From contig OZ004608.1 in NCBI GenBank assembly GCA_963924565.1, forward strand, positions 11,904,001-11,968,000: a DNA stretch of 64,000 nt, given 5' to 3'. The DNA comes from Ascidiella aspersa. Lineage: Eukaryota. The position numbers and the translations under genes were made by a program. The notes beneath the pieces are model-generated. The model was not told where the DNA came from. It made no database searches and saw only the letters and a list, made by a program, of their open reading frames with translations. Positions 1-9,091 of the stretch are shown here, in pieces (positions within the stretch are counted from its first letter, which is position 1; each line of letters opens with the position of its first letter).

Positions 1-974
1 ATTCCCACCAAGGTTTGAAGCTTAGCTCAGTAAACAAATTCGTCCATCCTAAAACTTCGCCGTACGTCATGTTGATAATTAAATAATTTGAAACTTAGTA
101 TTTGCAAGTTAATGACTCGTTTTTTTGTATGTTGGACTACCTGTTGGATATACAAGTAAACAATTTGAATTAAAAGTTCTAACGGTAGCCTAAAGCCCTG
201 TCGTCTTTTAATCAGGTGTATCTCACGGCCTGACAAAACGCTCCTATAAAGATACCTTTATTGAAGTATTTTTTTAGTTTATAAACAAACAAGAAACAGG
301 TGATGTGTACCTGCAGGTATTTCCAACCTTGTAGATTCCTCATATTTTTTACCTAACTAAACCGTTTGGAAAGTTAGTAATTTATATTTGGTTGATCAAA
401 TCGACATTTCTAAAATCGTTTAATTATTAGGCCTAATATCTAAAACTGTTACTAAAAAATCAAATTTTGTTACTCGAAATGTTAAAAAAAACTCTGAAGC
501 TTGAATGTAATCCCGCATCATGAGCGTCTGGTGTTCTGTTAGTAAAAATATATTGTATTATACCTATACCTACTATGAACACCTAGAACTGGCTTACATC
601 AGACTTGATCGACTCTCATAAAATCTAGCATATCTTGGTTAATGGTTAGCATGGTAATCAGCTTCCCAATTGCAAATATAGCTTCTCAAACAGTTGCGCT
701 GCAGCTTTGCGAACACAAAGCATTGTTTATTATGTAAAGTTCATAACAACATTACCATATTGTCCAAAGTGTATTCAGCGATCCGGTACATTTTGTTTTT
801 CACTTGCAACTCGTGATGCCAATCAATGCAGGCTAACAAAAACTAGATATCTATATGCGCATAAGCAAAAATGTTATTTCTTCAATTTTAATTTTTTTTA
901 ATTACTTTGTTAGGCTATCTGAATATTAAAATTAGGCTATAGGCTATATTAAATTGATTTTCTTGACAACAAGG

Positions 975-2235
975 ATGTCGTACCGTGAGATTTTAGGATG
1001 GAAGGATGTCTTTGCTCAGTTAGGTTTCACAACTTGGTGGGAATCATTTCGATCTTACACTTTAATTATTATATCAGCCAGCACTTTATTCTATGTGTAC
1101 AGTTCAAGTTCAGGACATGTCGTTTGTCTGCCTTCTGATAATGGGACAGCTATGTTTATAAACTTTGGTTCAGCTGAAGCGGCGTTCACTGATCTTAGAT
1201 GTATTTCATTTTTGCCTCTGGGAAGTTTTTTAACAAACTTCTGGTGGATAAGTTTAGTGGCAACTGCTTCGATTTTCCTGGCAAACAACTTTTGGGAATA
1301 TGCCACACCGTTGGTTGCAGCAATCAACGACCTTAAATCTTTCTACGACAACATTCTGAAAGAGGAAAGAAAATGTCAAATACACGATTTGTTAGACTAC
1401 AAACTAGTAGGCAAACCTCTTCTACCAGCAGATGAACCACAGTCTACCAGCAGGAGTGTTAGTGAGCAGCAAAACTATTCAAAACATACGGAATCAAGGA
1501 AATTATGGAAGGCATTTTTGCAACAAGAACGAAGTCACTTTGGGTCCTGGTATCGCGCGAGAAACGTCATTTCCCTTTTTGTGTCAGCCATGTACGCCAT
1601 AGCGATGGCCGTGTTGGTAATGTTGTTGTTGATACAAATGCAACCTGAATTTGACTGCGTCGTCAACAACACAAGCTTTGTTTGCATCTATCCGCAACAG
1701 AATGTTATCTTGCCTGTTGTCGTGACGCATATGGTGATGTCATCGGTGCAGTGCCTAATATTTTTGGTCGTTCTTTGCAAATATGGAAAACTTGGGAATA
1801 TCAAGCTGTTTCTTCGTATTATGAACCATTCAGGAATTAGCAAAAGGTTAGTAGCTTTTAAAGAGATAGGCCGACTGCAGTTTCTAGATCTGACATTTGC
1901 AGTTTTCTAAATCTCATTATTTCTTATCCTAGTTTTTAAGATATTGTAAAAGTATGATTAAAATTATGGTTTTGTTTTGCAGCGAAAACCACGAGGAGTT
2001 CAAAACAATTGTTGAAGAAATCAAAGACAATAAGAAAAATCTAAAAAAGGCTATAAAGGATGAAATTAAGAATTTCCAAACAATAACCAGTGAAAACGAA
2101 GAATATTTCCATATCTACAAATTGACTGGAGGTCAATTAGAGGATGTTTTTAAAGAGTTAGAGTCACGATTTGCGGTAAATATTGATAAGCTTCGGGTAC
2201 AAGAAAAGGATGATTTTTGCTTTTCTGATGTTTGA
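975..2235 (+). CDS. LRRC8/pannexin-like four-TM large-pore channel protein without an LRR domain (2 coding exons: 975-1846, 1983-2235; ~374 aa)
   Basis: The intron 1847-1982 (AG|gttagt...ttttgcag|C) joins ORF 954..1910 to ORF 1954..2235 in frame (..GISKS-ENHEEF..). Motifs match the LRRC8 TM region as recalled: TTWWESFRSY ~ KPWWDVFTDY, VVCLP ~ MICLP, AFTDLRC ~ NYVDAVC, IFLANNFW ~ IFLACSNFW, FDCVV...FVCIYP ~ VDCTV...YRCAHP. There are four hydrophobic segments and two Cys per extracellular loop. Confidence 0.75.
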
Positions 2236-3432
2236 TCGTGTTAGTAAATCATGAATTACCTTGACCATAGTTCATAAGGCTGTAGAATTATAAACAAAAA
2301 AGTATTCTCAAAACAGTGTTGTAAACGATGCAAATCTAAATTGACTGTACCAATCAAGTCATTTGTAAATAACCTAGGTCACAGTCCAGTAATTTGCCAA
2401 AAAAATAATAATAAGTCAAACCCAAGTCCAAGTCACCGAGGGTATATTGGCCTAGTTCAAATTTCACCCAAAAAAAAACAGCTTACCAATTATATTTATA
2501 TTGCTTTAATTTTTTATGTTACAGCCCTCAAATATGCAATTTCTGCGTATTAGTAACATTTTTGAAATTTTAACGTATTTACAATAATATGTAGGCCAAT
2601 CAAGCTCATAATTTTTTGTTTTTTTACATGCATTTTTTTGTGCTTCGCGCGAACGCCATGCCTTTGTTTTTAGAACACAATGAGACTTTTTTCATTTGCA
2701 TAAAAATCTTTGATTAGTTTTTCTTTGAGACGTATTATATCGTAATTTAAAAAAAACGTGCGTTTAACAACAAATTTATTAGTGGAAACCTAAACGGAAC
2801 GGTTCGGAAGGCGTTGTGAAAATATTTTTGCAGGTACGACGTTCCGTTAAAAATAATGTTCATTTCTACAAGGCTATGTCGCTTTTTCACCTCTTCCCGC
2901 CATCTCCTTGAATGTATTTATACTAAGAATTAGGATGCATATTTGTGAAGAAATGCGTTTCGATGATAATTGCTTTACTTCCCCCTGGTTACTTCGTTCG
3001 GGTTATATAGGCTAAATCGATCGTATAATTTGATATCCGGTATTATTGCTTAAGCCTATTGTTAATCTTTTTAACATTCATTTTATAATTAGCTTAGAAA
3101 AACTGATTTGTGAAAAAATGTGAAAAAATAATCGTGTAGGTTGGTGTTCGACACACAATGTTTGCCAGGTACAAGTCATCCTGATGGCTAAATTTAGACT
3201 TCCACTTTGATGCGTCAAGCTACAGCACTGAGTTTAGGCAAATGTTTTGTTTTAACATACTACCTAAATTTACATTTATAAAAATCAGTTGTTTGTTGTG
3301 GTATGGCTGTTTTTCACTTTAAAAATACTTAAATAAAGATATTTTATCCAATTAAACGATGACAAAACACTTAAAATGAATTATGCACGCCAAAGGCTCA
3401 GTCATTTTGTATACACAAAAAATAATAATTAA

Positions 3433-3800
3433 TAGAGATTGACCGAAACCGATACCCGACTTTTTACAATTTTGTCATCCGATACCCGATACGATTTTTT
3501 ATATACCTGGGAAATGTTCAAAACTTGAATTAAATGAAACTAAAATCCAAATAACGTTTTAGTTTATATACCTATATTCATTATTAAACTACTATTTTGC
3601 ATATTGCCTTGACATAATGCTGAAACCCAAATTTGTTGATTAAAAATAGTTATGTTGTTTGTTCTACAGGAAATATTATATCATTTTACATACTAAAATA
3701 TCGTCAGAAGTATCGGCTTACATTTACCGATACTAATATATCGGTAGAAGCCAAATATCGGCCGATATTATCAACAAACCGATATATCGGTCAATCTCTA
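3433..3800. mobile_element. Non-autonomous hAT-like MITE
   Basis: Perfect 14-bp terminal inverted repeats TAGAGATTGACCGA / TCGGTCAATCTCTA, multiple subterminal CCGATA/TATCGG motifs, and a degenerate 8-bp flank (ataattaa / ataatgac). Confidence 0.75.
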
Positions 3801-3878
3801 ATAATGACACAAAGGTAGAAACTTTATGACTAGGACTCCGGAATATTCACAATGAAAAGTTTGGCAGACCTTTTAGAG

Positions 3879-3950
3879 CAGGGATGGGCAATTATTTTTA
3901 GTCGCGGGCCGCATGAGAAACTTAAAATGATGTGACGGGCCGGGTCAAAA
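3879..3950. mobile_element. Truncated hAT/Charlie-like element end
   Basis: CAGGGATGGGCAA...CGCGGGCCGCAT...CGGGCCG resembles the left termini of the hAT MITEs at 12601 and 41529. No matching right end was found. Confidence 0.45.
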
Positions 3951-4904
3951 AAAACCTCAAATACACGCAACATGACGTCATACTCTGGCGCCATAAAACA
4001 AATAAGCTAACGAACTTGTTGTTACGTTTGGAGTTGTGCGAAAATGTGCAATTTAAATCAAATTTAAAGAAGGCCACAAGACGTTTTAAAATGCAAACTT
4101 TAAATTAGATTTAGAGGGGAACGTGACGCATTGAGCACAGATAAAAGAATGTACCTTACTTGATAAATTGGCGTTTATTAAGTTGTTGCCTGGTGTGAAC
4201 TCATGCGACAATCTTGCCTAACTACTGTGGTATTGTCCGACTTACAGGACTAAAGGCTAAAATCTATCTATTGCTACGAACCAAATTAGCAAAATCCGTG
4301 CAACTGAATACAAACTACAACTGAAAAGTGACTGGTTTACCCTGACCAACACCAAATATAGCTAAGGTACAAAAGCACGAAAACAAAATAAATCTTGGCG
4401 AGAATCTTTACCACATTAGGATATAGGGTACTTTAATATTAATAAAAATACACAGCGCAGCTATACAAGCAGTTTTTTCAAATTCGAACAGAATTATTAA
4501 ACAGCATTTAATTTACCTCGATCATTAATACGCAAAACAAAAGTTAAAATGAAAACCGGGACACCATTGGAAGCGGAATCGGCAACGACATATTGCACCA
4601 TCGCGTGATACTATTTCATTGTCAGACGCATAGCTCTCAAGCGGTACGTTTGGTTTAATTTTGACTTCAAGCAAATGAATACATATCGAACTTTTAGTGC
4701 AACATAGTTGACAAATTCCTAAATAAACCTCATACAGACTAAGATCCTTAAACTTTGACCACGAAAATTGAAAATTCCCAAAATTAGGTGGCGCCGATTC
4801 GTATCAAATCAGTTTTTAAAGTAACTGGGACAATATCCAGTTTAGGGTGAAACGTGTGAACTAACGAAGTGCTACGGAGGGTCGAAAGCGTTTGGTGGCA
4901 ATCA

Positions 4905-7900
4905 TCAGGTGGTCCTGAGCTGGTAATCTGAAAAACAATAAACGATATAAAGTACACATTAAGACTAAAAACGTTACCGTTAGAACCATTCGACTGTTAA
5001 ACAACAAAAACAAGGGAAACAAAAGGGCAAACGTGAATTGTAATAAATTAGTCAAAAGGCGCACACTTGAAATTGTCGGCCAAGAGCAAAAAGTCGCAGA
5101 AGTTTGAACAAAGCTGCCCTCGTGTTTATCAGCCTCTAAACACCTGGGTTTTGACAAATTTATAAAAACCTTGTTTTTGAAGCAATATTTCCCGGATTAG
5201 GCAGTACCATTTTTCAAATTTATTCAACGTGCGAAAATACTTTCTAAACAAGAAAGGAAATCCAAATCCAGGTTTAAAACATAGCATTTGATTAAATAGT
5301 AAAACGGATGAAAAGTACTGAAATCCGCAGTGATAAAAGAAAAGTTTTAAGTTTATAACTTACCGCCGTTCTGGGTTATGTAGCGCACCCAGGGAAGTGC
5401 TTGGTAGCCGCTTTTCTCAATGATTTTAAGATACCGCACCTTTACAACAAACGAACCAATAGTTATTTAGACTTGAATATTAAAGCCCATATAGAAGTAG
5501 GTATCAAGTTTAACGTTTCGAATAACTCTTTATTTATCTTCAACAGTTGTTTGAAATGTTCAAAATAATACTACATATGTATGGGATTTTATATTCGTAT
5601 TACGTCTTACTCCAACCTTCAACCATTATGCTCAATTAATTATTTGTTTTGATAAATATTTATTAAAATCGTTTATCATTAAAAGGAAGCAATACTAAAA
5701 TGCTCATACCTTTAGTTCCAACGAAAGCTTAATTTCACACCATAATCCTTTGATTTATCGGAATTTTGCCACGAATGGTCTTATATCTTTGTACTTATGT
5801 TACTCACCTGAATGCCAGATGTTGTGAAGTAGGGAATTTCGAACTTGACGCTGATCGGGGGGCGTCCCTCAACCTCTTCACTTTCCACGCTGGGAAGTCC
5901 GAAGTGAGCTCTCATCAAATACTCTTTTCCACCCTAATAAAGACAACTTGGTCGCTGATTTAATTTAAAAAAAACGTAGATCTTAATCTCACTTCTGCCT
6001 TTATTACGAAAGGCGTGGTTTACTATTATAAGTTAGGCAAACATTTATATTTTTGGAGCACTCGGACTGATTACGCGACTTTTTAAACACAAACGCAACC
6101 AAAGCGTGGCAACTCGCAATTTAAGATGTTTAAACATATTGTAAGTAGGTCGCAAGGTGCTTACTATTGTAGGTATATGAACCTTAATAATTTCTTAACT
6201 GTAGGTAGGCATATAAACTGCCAGGGTTACACCAAGATTACACCATTGACGTAACCTAATCACACGCTAAAAATGATGTGAAGTCATTCTTATTCCATTT
6301 CTGCTGCTTTTCCTTTCATGGATAAGTATAGGTTTGGTAACAAAAATGGCGTTCGTCCATTTTTAACTTTTGCCCTAGTGTTTTTTTACCGGAAAAGACT
6401 TGATTTGCCAGACGATTTGGGTCGACTCCGGCACCCAGCGCACACTACCAACGGAGGTCTTGAACTTTGGCGAATCGGCGTCGTTGGGAACTGGAATCAC
6501 AATCTCCACGTTGTTTGCTGTGGATCGCCTCTTGAACTGGCTCTTTGCCTGTGTGAGAAAATTTGTTCACGTTGATGCCGAATCGGCGTTTTAGATATAT
6601 TCGGCGCCGTGAAATTACAAAAAACGATCTTTTATAAATCTATAGCGCGTAACGATTTAGATCAGTCAGCTTTGTGTTGGAAAAAACACAGATTACTTTT
6701 TAGCTCAGCAAAATCATACACACGATACATTACTGCTGAAACAAACCACTGATTTTTGCAGAACACTATGTTTGAAAATAAAATTACGATGGTTGTATTT
6801 TCCCTGGAGCAGTTTTCTCGTATGTTGGCATGATCTAACTTCCGTAATCGTAATTGCTACCTACACACCAGTTGGGCAATAAGGTTCTAGAGAGAAATGA
6901 CTTATTAAAAAAATACCATACCTTGACCATGATCTCTACTCGGCTGTGTGAGTGTCTCTCAATCACTGATTCGATCCATATCAACGGCTTTACCTACAAA
7001 AGTTTCGGGTGTTTTCAGGGAGGGGATTTAAATAGTACACAATTTTCTTCAGCGGCCTGTTACTTTGGAAATCAAAAATATACAAGAGACATGGAAGAGG
7101 CTTAGGCAGCCGTCAGTTCTCGCCTGAAGGGCTAGTGCCTTACTAACCCACAGCAATGCTAAACACTAAAACAGTCTACTTTCTTATTCAGCCTTATACT
7201 GAAAAATACTAGGTTTAGTATTACAAGACTCATTATGTATTACGTGGGTGTTAAGGCGATAGGACATCAATTCGAATTCCCCATCTGGCGGTATAAAGGA
7301 TATGGTGCGGTCGTTTTCGAAGCGGGAAAGTCGCACGCACTGGTGAAATTTGATGTCCTCCATTTCCACCGCTTTGCTCTTACCCCCTGGAAATTTTAAC
7401 CGCATTAATTATTTTATCGGAGTGACGTGAATTGTGTCAGGAAATAAGTTGAGCTGCGAAGATTTAGAACTATAAAACAAAGGGGACAGCATTTGTTGGA
7501 TTTTTACAACATGGTAGGTTTCCCCTTCCGTAATATGTTGGTGTGTTGCAACTTGCAGGGTTTAAAATTTTTTGTAAAAAAATATCGAACAAATTATACG
7601 ACCTTTTAAAGAAACGGTGGTGGAATACTTTTAGACCATAATATACCAGTTTTGCATACAAACAGATTTTATCATAGAATATAGTATGAATATCACATAT
7701 ACACAATTATAGAAGCTTTTCTGGGTCATACTTCCAGTGTTTTGGAACAGCACTTTGTCATTGAGGCCCAATCTAAGCTCTGGCATGCCGGAGAGAAAAA
7801 CCCTCATTTTCACACTTCCCACAATCTCTGAGCGCAGCACGTTTCCAGTTGTGCTAACAAGAAGGTTCACTGATTCAATCACATCCAAGAACACCTATGT

Positions 7901-9091
7901 AAAAATAACAAAACATTAGAACAATCACACCAATGTATGATTTGTTTTAAATCAGTGCAAAGGCTGTTTTAATCAGGGTGAAATCTTGATTAGGAAATAG
8001 CTAACCTCGTTTTTGCGATATTTAAGTCCCTCTGATCGCCAGGAAACAGCATTTGTTACAGTGGAAGGAGGACGCACTTGTATCTCAAGTTTGTGACTTT
8101 CCTGTGTTATATATCTAGGGAAAGCAAATTGTGTAAAATATGCCATCAATAGTTGAGTTTAAAACCTTGTTGATAAAAACTTATGGCCCAACAACAAAAT
8201 AGTGTCAGGGCATAACATTCAGATATAACTTACTCTTGCAATACTTTTGCATCACTGAACTGTGGATAGCCAAAGTCCATAACCTCATCAAACAGTTCAT
8301 AAACAATCACAAAATTGTCTTTAATGCTCTCTTCTTCCAGTTCTTTGAAGTAATGCGTTAAAATCTAGATTCAACATAAATACCACAGGTTAAACCTCAA
8401 ACGTTTGGACTGCTTTTAATCACAATTTAGGTATTTACCAACCTGGCATAGTTTGTGCATAAATGCCATGATCATCATAACATTGGAATTTTTGTTTGTG
8501 GTCGCCACCATATAAAGGTTTGTAAAACTTATAAACACAAACGTAATATCACCATGTTGTATTACAGGGGAAAGGGTGCCTTCCTGTAAAATTAAAAATG
8601 TAACACATTCTCAATTGAAGTTTAAGCTTTTACATTTTTATGCTTAAAACCGATTTAAAAAACGTTTAGCCCTGAAACTTTATCTCAACCATTTTTTCAA
8701 CAAAACAAATCACTAAACCTTTTGCATTTAAAAAAAAGCATGTTTTAACCAACTTTTTTAAGTTAAAATACTTGAAATATTATCATGACCTCTTCCTGTT
8801 CCATTATAAGCTTGGGAAAGGAGTCAATGGAATTCATCGGAATATCACCTCGATAATTCCTTGATATTAGCACCTGTGGAAAAATTTTGAAAAGCAAACA
8901 TTAAGATCAGTATAAAGCCCAATATAATACTATCTATTCAGTTTTCATTAACCTGTAAAATGCAGCTAAAACAAACAGTAGGTAAAATAATAAAGTATTT
9001 AAATCATATTTTCCTACATAATAACATGATAGAACTTTTTTTGTCATACCTTCCCTTTAAAGTCCAGTATGTACAGTGCAGATGCAACCAT
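4905..9091 (-). CDS. AP1M1: AP-1 complex subunit mu-1 (12 coding exons)
   Basis: Spliced translation: MVASALYILDFKGK|VLISRNYRGD...|EGTLSP...|...ELEEESIKDNFVIVYEL...|...VSWRSEGLKYRKNE|VFLDVIESVNLL...GMPELRLGLNDK|...DIKFHQCVRLSRFENDRTISFIPPDGEFELMSYRL|...|AKSQFKRRSTANNVEI...|GGKEYLMRAHFGLPSV...|VRYLKIIEKSGYQALPWVRYITQNG|DYQLRTT*. All introns are GT-AG and phases are consistent. Confidence 0.96.

What the first reader, a model, noticed from the sequence alone, without database searches (positions are those of the whole stretch)
975..2235. LRRC8-type channel pore with no leucine-rich repeats: a possible new large-pore channel subfamily
Seen: a two-exon gene encoding four TM helices with LRRC8-like signature motifs (WWESF, VCLP, D-x-x-C, IFLANNFW, EL2 C...C-x-x-P). 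It has only two Cys per extracellular loop, N-glycosylation sequons in both loops (NGT, NNT), and a short ~85-aa charged helical tail that ends in a stop. No LRR-coding sequence is visible in the 2.7 kb before the convergent AP1M1 3' end. Established: LRRC8 (VRAC) proteins are a pannexin-related TM domain fused to a large LRR domain, and pannexins/innexins have two Cys per loop. Inference: this is either an LRRC8 paralogue that replaced its LRRs with a novel tail, or a relic intermediate between pannexins and LRRC8. It could form its own channel or modulate LRRC8 heteromers.
Basis: partly seen in the sequence, partly recalled or inferred. Interest (0 to 1): 0.8.

Follow-up and report, generated by a model that had tools for sequence, protein, structure and literature searches.

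The report
Sea-squirt LRRC8-type pore protein without repeats
This sea-squirt gene encodes a four-helix membrane protein clearly related to the pore half of the vertebrate volume-regulated anion channel LRRC8, but it carries a short helical tail instead of the leucine-rich repeats. It belongs to a family of at least 19 genes that standard annotation misses and that no paper I could search describes.

Summary
Window 975-1846 plus 1983-2235 is an intact two-exon gene for a 374-aa protein with four TM helices, two Cys per extracellular loop and no LRRs.

The single sequence hits nothing in Pfam or PDB. A profile of 14 paralogs from the same genome hits LRRC8C/D/A pore domains (E 4e-8) and no pannexin. 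The AlphaFold model matches LRRC8A best (Z 16.4), then pannexins.

The genome is a tunicate with at least 19 such loci. It has no canonical LRRC8 and no detectable innexin. All copies fall in a strongly supported clade with 36 unnamed metagenome/SRA proteins. This clade is separate from one holding vertebrate LRRC8 plus LRR-less amphioxus, coral, myxozoan and Lingula proteins.

LRR-less LRRC8-type pores are therefore widespread, and some are already auto-annotated. This divergent tunicate branch, with its conserved helical tail (FFxIYKLxGG), is undescribed in the literature I could search.

An AU test cannot say whether the branch is sister to vertebrate LRRC8. Expression and channel activity are untested.

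Verdict: a real, new variant of a known kind, of moderate to high interest.

The parts
975..1846 (+). Exon 1: start codon, N-terminal pore-lining segment, TM1-TM4, both extracellular loops, intracellular loop and first post-TM4 helix (residues 1-290, plus 2 bases of codon 291)
   Evidence: ORF and donor AG|GTTAGT. The same phase-2 donor occurs after 'SGxGK' in 12 paralogs. AF2 model: pLDDT 79, pTM 0.71.
1035..1112 (+). TM1 (residues 21-46), beginning with the TWWE motif (KPWWE in paralogs, KPWWD/E in LRRC8)
   Evidence: Helix 21-46 in the model. WWE is invariant in the 14 own-genome sequences. It aligns to LRRC8C 'LKPWWDVF'.
1113..1238 (+). Extracellular loop 1: C51 (VCLPS), N-glycosylation sequon N56-G-T, EL1 helix, C76
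   Evidence: Strand 50-55 and helix 66-79. C51 and C76 are invariant. An EL1 sequon is present in 32 of 38 clade members.
1239..1301 (+). TM2 (residues 89-109; FWWISLVATASIFLANNFW)
   Evidence: Helix 89-109. It aligns to LRRC8C TM2.
1302..1538 (+). Intracellular loop 1: two helices flanking a low-confidence, charged linker (residues ~134-161)
   Evidence: Helices 111-133 and 162-185; pLDDT below 50 at 137-148.
1539..1637 (+). TM3 (residues 189-221), preceded by the invariant R196 (YRARN)
   Evidence: Helix 189-221. R196 is invariant.
1638..1697 (+). Extracellular loop 2: beta hairpin with C228 and C237, sequon NNTS
   Evidence: Strands 225-230 and 233-238. Both Cys are conserved.
1698..1784 (+). 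TM4 (residues 242-270)
   Evidence: Helix 242-270.
1847..1982 (+). Intron (136 nt, GT...AG, phase 2)
   Evidence: Sequence. The position is conserved in paralogs. The intron is absent in the intronless relative P0002.
1983..2235 (+). Exon 2: 83-aa helical cytoplasmic tail with the family motif EEYFHIYKLTGGQLEDVF, then stop TGA at 2233-2235
   Evidence: The tail is conserved in every close paralog examined and in P0002, P0019, P0005 and P0010. dN/dS is 0.18-0.28. It is confidently helical in the P0002 model. It has no PDB or LRRC8D similarity.
1..70 (-). First 23 codons of the closest paralog (51% identical), head-to-head with this gene; the rest lies left of the window
   Evidence: G000:C2:11903183-11904070(-). 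The reverse complement of window 1-70 reads MTYGEVLGWTNLFTELSFKPWWE.
71..974 (.). 904-bp region between the two divergent start codons (presumed shared promoter region)
   Evidence: Coordinates only. No functional test was done.

Best explanation
The gene encodes a subunit of an LRRC8/pannexin-type large-pore channel that lacks the leucine-rich-repeat domain.

Shown here:
- It is homologous in sequence profile and in predicted fold to the LRRC8 pore domain. The shared elements are the N-terminal segment, four TM helices, the EL1 strand and helix, the EL2 hairpin, and cytoplasmic helices from the intracellular loop and after TM4.
- It has two conserved Cys in each extracellular loop and a conserved N-glycosylation sequon in EL1.
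- A conserved, family-specific C-terminal helical module stands where LRRC8 has its repeats.
- It is under purifying selection and belongs to a family of at least 19 genes in a tunicate genome. That genome shows no canonical LRRC8.

Inferred:
- Like LRRC8 and pannexins, six or seven subunits assemble around a central pore lined by the N-terminus and TM1/TM2, and the loops are locked by two disulfides.
- The EL1 glycan keeps the channel non-junctional.
- The channel passes small ions or metabolites between cytosol and outside, or across an organelle membrane.
- Gating must use the cytoplasmic helical domain rather than LRRs.
- Head-to-head and tandem paralogs probably co-assemble into heteromers.
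- The position aligned to LRRC8A's selectivity Arg103 is Ser66. An Arg-based anion filter is therefore not expected; this rests on a low-identity alignment.
For: - Profile of 14 paralogs vs PDB: LRRC8C E 4.2e-8, LRRC8D 6e-7, LRRC8A 3e-5, covering profile positions 18-253 = LRRC8 residues 20-341. No pannexin or innexin chain appears at E<=10.
- AF2 model (pLDDT 79, pTM 0.71). The Foldseek rows shown (ranks 1-47) are all LRRC8 pore domains, E 4e-8, TM 0.6-0.67. VIA wide: LRRC8A Z 16.4 over 251 residues, then pannexin-2 at 15.3 and pannexin-1 at 14.6.
- The full-length intronless relative P0002 aligns to LRRC8A residues 5-397 (Z 16.9, 270 residues).
- 20 of 38 clade members hit Pfam Pannexin_like (best 1.8e-6) and none hits Innexin.
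- Cys and WWE positions are invariant; 32 of 38 have an EL1 sequon.
- The genome holds at least 19 intact loci. Splice sites and tail are conserved. dN/dS is 0.18-0.41 on exon 1 and 0.18-0.72 on exon 2 in five of six pairs; the sixth, near-identical pair L006/L011 gives 2.03 on exon 1.
- No LRR motifs lie downstream, and only 2 of 62 relatives carry LRRs.
Against: - The window's own protein alone gives no Pfam or PDB hit. Homology rests on a profile and a predicted fold.
- No transcript evidence exists, and no canonical poly(A) signal lies within 1 kb of the stop.
- Oligomeric state, pore, permeant species, membrane location and gating are all inferred by analogy.
- The fold Z-scores for LRRC8 and pannexins are within about 1-2 units. 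'LRRC8-type rather than pannexin-type' therefore rests mainly on sequence profiles.
- The tail was judged from exon 2 alone and from an intronless relative.
Confidence: 0.75

Rival explanations
1. Secondary loss. The tunicate family is the fast-evolving co-orthologue of vertebrate LRRC8. It once had LRRs and lost them, keeping a short helical stump.
For: [quoted passage not shown] The AU test does not reject a tree joining the tunicate clade with vertebrate LRRC8 (delta lnL 2.2, p 0.446). Tunicate proteins evolve fast (PMC8769644, citing Berna and Alvarez-Valin).
Against: The free tree places vertebrate LRRC8 with coral, Lingula and amphioxus proteins, across a 99% SH-aLRT split from the tunicate clade. 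Amphioxus, cnidarian and Lingula relatives are also LRR-less, so LRR-less is the simpler ancestral state. The tail profile shows no similarity to the fish LRRC8D C-terminal half (hhalign probability 0.03) or to any PDB LRR.
Confidence: 0.3
2. It is the tunicate's highly divergent pannexin/innexin lineage, not an LRRC8-type protein. The LRRC8 hits would then reflect only the shared superfamily.
For: It has two Cys per loop and a glycosylated EL1, as in pannexins. The language-model neighbours of relative P0003 are 'pannexin-1-like' clusters (0.92). Pannexin-2 Z 15.3 is close to LRRC8A Z 16.4. No Innexin-family hit was found in this genome, whereas most tunicates are reported to have one innexin (PMC8769644).
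Against: The family profile finds 26 LRRC8 sequences and no pannexin or innexin in PDB at E<=10. Pfam Pannexin_like hits 20 of 38 members and Innexin hits none. The KPWW[DE] start of TM1 is shared with LRRC8. The negative Innexin genome scan is weak evidence, because it works exon by exon and its controls did not ring.
Confidence: 0.1
3. The locus is a non-functional or untranscribed duplicate (young pseudogene) within a gene family expansion.
For: No RNA run holds the stretch. There is no canonical poly(A) signal. The window copy has TTWWE where nearly all relatives have KPWWE.
Against: Both exons are intact with consensus splice sites. All invariant Cys, W, E and R positions are kept. It is only 51% identical to its nearest paralog yet has no stop or frameshift. 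The family shows dN/dS well below 1.
Confidence: 0.07

Closest known systems
LRRC8A-E, subunits of the vertebrate volume-regulated anion channel (VRAC); Pfam PF12534 Pannexin_like + LRR domain
   Same: - Pore-domain homology by profile (E 4e-8) and by fold (Z 16.4-16.9).
- KPWW[DE] motif at the start of TM1.
- The same order of EL1 strand/helix and EL2 hairpin.
- Cytoplasmic helices in IL1 and after TM4, matching up to LRRC8A residue ~397.
- A glycosylated EL1.
   Different: - No LRR domain. An ~60-residue family-specific helical module with the motif FFxIYKLxGG stands in its place.
- EL1 and IL1 are much shorter.
- Two Cys per loop.
- Ser at the position aligned to the LRRC8A Arg103 filter (low-identity alignment).
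- The single sequence scores below the Pfam threshold.
- It falls in a separate clade in the tree.
LRR-less 'LRRC8 pannexin-like TM region domain-containing' proteins of amphioxus (453-469 aa, annotated LRRC8A/E-like), Thelohanellus kitauei (610-619 aa), Acropora (367 aa) and Lingula (fused to FN3 repeats)
   Same: They have an LRRC8-type pore domain without LRRs. All are found by the same profile. None has been characterised functionally.
   Different: They pass or approach the Pfam threshold (amphioxus 67.8 bits) and group with vertebrate LRRC8 in clade A. The tunicate family is in clade B across a 99% split. It has its own N-terminal pattern (LGWxDxxxxxxxKPWWES) and its own tail.
Pannexins 1-3 / innexins (Pfam PF00876)
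   Same: Same superfamily fold (Z 13.6-15.3). Two Cys per extracellular loop and N-glycosylated loops. No LRRs, and a helical cytoplasmic C-terminus.
   Different: No sequence-profile match to pannexin or innexin chains or to Pfam Innexin. Pannexins lack the KPWW motif (from my own knowledge of the sequences, not tested here).

Membership tests
LRRC8 (VRAC subunit proper) | N-terminal Pannexin_like TM domain recognised by Pfam PF12534 at its gathering score | tested here: not met
   The window exon-1 protein gives no Pfam family at E<=10. Paralogs score 12-20 bits against a cut-off of 25. Three paralog loci reach 25-29 bits only when fragments are summed. Homology is nevertheless shown at profile level.
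LRRC8 (VRAC subunit proper) | C-terminal domain of about 15-17 leucine-rich repeats | tested here: not met
   Exon 2 ends in a stop after 83 aa with no LRR Pfam hit. No LRR motif occurs in any frame of 2236-5000 or downstream of distant paralogs. The tail profile has no similarity to the LRRC8D C-terminal half.
LRRC8 (VRAC subunit proper) | Swelling-activated, anion-selective current; Arg ring (LRRC8A R103) at the extracellular constriction | not testable with these tools
   Counting back from the conserved Cys in the alignment, the aligned position is Ser66.
LRRC8/pannexin pore-domain superfamily (fold level) | Four TM helices with N-terminal segment, EL1 beta-strand plus helix, EL2 beta-hairpin, and a cytoplasmic helical bundle from IL1 and the C-terminus | tested here: met
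   The AF2 secondary structure has this order. Foldseek E 4e-8 to LRRC8 chains. VIA Z 16.4 to LRRC8A and 15.3 and 14.6 to pannexins. P0002 Z 16.9 over 270 residues.
LRRC8/pannexin pore-domain superfamily (fold level) | Conserved extracellular Cys pairs linking EL1 and EL2 | tested here: met
   C51, C76, C228 and C237 are invariant or nearly so across 38 clade members. Disulfide formation itself was not tested.
Innexin/pannexin (Pfam PF00876) | Match to the Innexin profile | tested here: not met
   0 of 38 clade members at E<=0.1 and 0 of 62 relatives at E<=0.001. No pannexin or innexin chain is found in the PDB profile search at E<=10.
Connexin (Pfam PF00029) | Connexin profile match; three Cys per extracellular loop | tested here: not met
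   No Pfam hit. There are two Cys per loop. Connexin chains score lower (Z 11-13) and over fewer residues.

The most novel reading that the evidence does not exclude
The tunicate clade is a distinct, previously unrecognised branch of large-pore channels. It works without LRRs, uses its own conserved cytoplasmic helical module as gate or sensor, and has taken over in sea squirts the roles played by VRAC (and perhaps pannexin) in vertebrates. Together with the LRR-less amphioxus, cnidarian and brachiopod proteins, it would show that the LRRC8-type pore split from innexins long before chordates, and that the LRR fusion was a late, vertebrate-stem event.
Probability: 0.3. Interest if true: 0.75.

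Novelty: new variant of a known kind. Interest (0 to 1): 0.58.

Why it matters
[quoted passage not shown] They also state that LRRC8 arose at the origin of chordates, when a pannexin pore fused to an LRR domain, and that the LRRs may confer volume sensing (PMC6363415, PMC3928549). One review mentions only LRRC8-like genes in Nematostella (PMC9399500).

What was found here is a large, selected family of LRRC8-type pores with no LRRs in the sister group of vertebrates, in a genome with no canonical LRRC8. Similar LRR-less proteins occur in amphioxus, cnidarians and a brachiopod. This matters in three ways:
- It gives natural 'LRR-deleted' channels for testing what the LRRs contribute to gating.
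- It points to an earlier origin of the LRRC8-type pore than the literature states.
- It flags a family that Pfam-based annotation misses in tunicates.

Tried and rejected
1. Single-sequence searches of exon 1 found nothing: Pfam, PDB phmmer and the word-indexed search of 5.8 billion proteins. Only the paralog profile worked.
2. The word-indexed search with a 38-sequence alignment returned just one protein that was already known.
It was rerun with P0002.
4. Tail idea: from memory, the motif FHIYKLTGGQLEDVF looked like the first LRR of LRRC8A. I tested this with tail profiles against PDB and by hhalign against fish LRRC8D (probability 0.03). There was no support, so I dropped it.
5. I looked for LRR exons behind the distant paralogs L017 and L019 and the weak Pannexin_like locus L023, over 10-19 kb. 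None were found.
6. I tried to resolve 'sister of vertebrate LRRC8' against 'separate lineage' by AU test. It was inconclusive (p 0.446).
7. No pannexin or innexin sequence was available from any tool, so the tree has no outgroup.
8. The taxon of the closest public relatives could not be established.
9. The first Atlas call failed.
10. No RNA run holds the stretch.

Full report
**1. What is in the sequence**

Window 975-1846 is an open frame starting at ATG. It ends at a consensus donor (AAAAG|GTTAGT). After a 136-nt intron, the acceptor ttttgcag|C opens exon 2 (1983-2235), which stops at TGA 2233-2235. The product is 374 aa.

The sequons NGT and NNT/NTS are also there, and each extracellular loop has exactly two Cys.

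**2. The single sequence is silent; the family is not**

Exon 1 alone gives no Pfam family at E<=10, no PDB sequence hit and no word-index homologue.

The window's own genome is 308 Mb in 75 contigs. It holds many paralogs:
- the nearest copy (51% identity) lies head-to-head, with its first 23 codons occupying window 1-70 on the minus strand;
- a second head-to-head pair lies on C4;
- seven tandem copies lie on C3 at 30.575-30.628 Mb;
- single copies lie on C9 and C4;
- six more distant intact ORFs also exist.

In all there are at least 19 intact loci plus fragments. WWE, four Cys and R196 are invariant in the 14-sequence own-genome alignment, and Pro20 is kept in at least 90% of them (the window itself has Thr).

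The close paralogs share the phase-2 donor after 'SGxGK'. They also share an exon-2 tail with the motif [DE]E[FY]FxIYKLxGG. dN/dS between diverged paralogs is 0.23-0.27 on exon 1 and 0.18-0.28 on exon 2. These are selected coding genes.

**3. Homology to the LRRC8 pore**

A profile of 14 paralogs, searched against all PDB sequences, finds LRRC8C (E 4.2e-8), LRRC8D (6e-7) and LRRC8A (3e-5). The match covers profile positions 18-253, equal to LRRC8 residues 20-341. No pannexin, innexin, connexin or CALHM chain appears at E<=10.

The AlphaFold2 model of exon 1 (pLDDT 79, pTM 0.71) has the LRRC8 order of elements:
- N-terminal segment and TM1;
- EL1 strand and helix;
- TM2;
- two IL1 helices around a disordered linker;
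- TM3;
- EL2 hairpin;
- TM4 and a post-TM4 helix.

The Foldseek rows shown (ranks 1-47) are all LRRC8 pore domains (E 4e-8 to 1e-6, TM 0.6-0.67). A Foldseek-independent scan of 48,161 chains ranks LRRC8A first (Z 16.4, 251 residues). Pannexin-2 (15.3) and pannexin-1 (14.6, 13.9, 13.6) come next, followed by connexins and innexin-6 (11-13).

Fold alone therefore says 'LRRC8/pannexin superfamily'. The sequence profiles say 'LRRC8 side'.

**4. Relatives elsewhere**

The same profile, scored against 1.84 billion representatives, finds 85 proteins at E<=1e-3. The best is only 2e-33. Of 62 scanned, 37 carry Pfam Pannexin_like, only 2 carry LRRs and none carries Innexin.

The named relatives are:
- fish LRRC8D;
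- amphioxus 'LRRC8A/E-like' proteins of 453-469 aa without LRRs;
- two Thelohanellus kitauei (Myxozoa) proteins of 610-619 aa;
- an Acropora palmata protein of 367 aa;
- a Lingula model with the pore domain fused to FN3 repeats.

A maximum-likelihood tree of 78 sequences and 288 columns splits into two clans with 99% SH-aLRT support. Clade A holds vertebrate LRRC8 together with the amphioxus, cnidarian and Lingula proteins. Clade B holds all 14 copies from this genome plus 36 proteins. The 20 clade-B representatives I looked up carry no name and come only from JGI/ENA metagenomes or SRA assemblies. Within clade B, 20 of 38 reach Pannexin_like at E<=0.1 and none reaches Innexin.

Forcing clade B to join vertebrate LRRC8 costs only 2.2 log-likelihood units (AU p 0.446). 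The data do not decide whether the tunicate family is the fast-evolving sister of vertebrate LRRC8 or an older separate branch. I had no pannexin or innexin sequence from a tool, so the tree has no outgroup.

**5. The tail**

An intronless relative, P0002 (394 aa; metagenome contig L027, itself beside a tandem paralog), has the pore domain and tail in one ORF. It carries the same motif: DIDFFHFIYKTFG against the window's EEYFHIYKLTGG. This supports the exon 1 to exon 2 join.

Its full-length model (pLDDT 78, pTM 0.72) shows seven confident helices after TM4. Residues up to ~324 superpose on LRRC8A up to ~397 (Z 16.9, 270 residues). These are the IL2 helices that precede the LRR domain. The remaining ~60 residues, which hold the conserved motif, lie beyond the match.

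Tail profiles find nothing in PDB and nothing in the fish LRRC8D C-terminal half (hhalign probability 0.03). Only its end is a family-specific helical module of unknown relationship.

**6. No LRRs, and the genomic setting**

No LRR-type motif occurs in any frame between the stop and the convergent gene. That gene is an adaptor-complex mu subunit (Adap_comp_sub on three exons).

A scan of the whole genome with Pfam Pannexin_like finds only these paralogs, weakly, plus one further weak ORF (L023). No LRR motifs lie within 19 kb downstream of L023. This assembly therefore shows no canonical LRRC8.

Innexin finds nothing even at E<=10. That scan works exon by exon and its controls did not ring, so absence is not shown.

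The genome has many intron-containing connexin genes and a cellulose-synthase-like ORF. Earlier notes of this scan call it a sea squirt. I take it to be a tunicate.

**7. Likely mechanism (inference)**

By homology, six or seven subunits should form a central pore.
- The loops carry two conserved Cys each.
- An EL1 N-glycosylation sequon is present in 32 of 38 clade members. In pannexins such glycans prevent gap-junction docking (PMC8769644), so a non-junctional channel is expected.
- Counting back from the conserved Cys in the alignment, the position equivalent to LRRC8A Arg103 is Ser66. An Arg-based anion filter is therefore not expected. This rests on a low-identity alignment.
- Without LRRs, gating must use the cytoplasmic helical domain.
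- The head-to-head and tandem arrangement, with pair members being each other's closest relatives, would suit co-expressed heteromers. This is speculation.

**8. Novelty**

[quoted passage not shown] One review notes LRRC8-like genes in Nematostella, citing Abascal and Zardoya 2012 (PMC9399500). I could not read the 2012 paper.

No paper in the searchable library combines LRRC8 with Ciona in a relevant way, or mentions PF12534 proteins of invertebrates.

LRR-less LRRC8-type proteins are thus present and auto-named in databases, but undescribed in the literature I could search. The tunicate clade is too divergent even for that auto-naming. I rate the finding a new variant of a known kind.

**9. 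Limits**

- There is no RNA evidence and no canonical poly(A) signal within 1 kb.
- No multimer model or functional data exist.
- The taxon of the closest public relatives is unknown.

Noticed in passing
window 1-70 (-) and G000:C2:11903183-11904070; also G000:C4:28437212-28438090(-) / 28440189-28441061(+): The gene's nearest paralog lies head-to-head with it, 904 bp between the start codons. A second head-to-head pair exists on another chromosome. In the tree the members of each pair are each other's sisters. This suggests either independent inverted duplications or concerted evolution within pairs.
   Followed up: partly
G000:C3:30575384-30627987: A tandem array of seven same-strand copies of the family lies within 53 kb. 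Some are nearly identical. One very young pair (L006/L011) gives dN/dS of about 2 on exon 1, from very few changes.
   Followed up: partly
window 2236-3300: There is no AATAAA or ATTAAA in the 1,065 nt after the stop codon, so the poly(A) site of the gene is not evident from sequence.
   Followed up: no
window ~5356-8900 (-): A convergent multi-exon adaptor-complex mu-subunit gene (AP-1 mu-like) lies here. Three exons hit Pfam Adap_comp_sub.
   Followed up: partly
L023 = G000:C1:21646717-21647199 (+): A 208-aa ORF gives a weak Pannexin_like hit (19.8 bits, model positions 18-147). It has a long asparagine/serine-rich EL1 and lacks the PWW motif. No LRR motifs lie within 19 kb downstream. It may be a further, very divergent family member or a fragment.
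   Followed up: partly
L017 (G000:C3:38660744-38661844) and L019 (G000:C5:6496465-6497565): Two distant paralogs have a long Cys-rich insertion after TM4 (…CCLWFDLGLTLTRCGFFSGCNDCC…) and a likely further splice donor. Their 3' exons were not found.
   Followed up: no
L027 6001-7185 and 9394-10631 (metagenome contig Ga0210059_1000733): A eukaryotic contig in a JGI metagenome carries two tandem intronless relatives. The second is split over two frames, by a frameshift or a short intron. The source organism is unknown and may be another tunicate.
   Followed up: no
P0052 (Lingula anatina XP_013407927.1, 2,457 aa): This database model, named 'tenascin-X', begins with an LRRC8-type pore domain (residues 22-263) followed by many FN3 repeats. 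It is either a real fusion of a pore to another extracellular or intracellular repeat domain, or a gene-model merger.
   Followed up: no
G000 genome-wide: No Innexin-family (PF00876) hit appears even at E<=10, although most tunicates are reported to have one innexin. There are 49 connexin exon hits. The exon-by-exon scan may simply miss a short-exon pannexin gene.
   Followed up: partly
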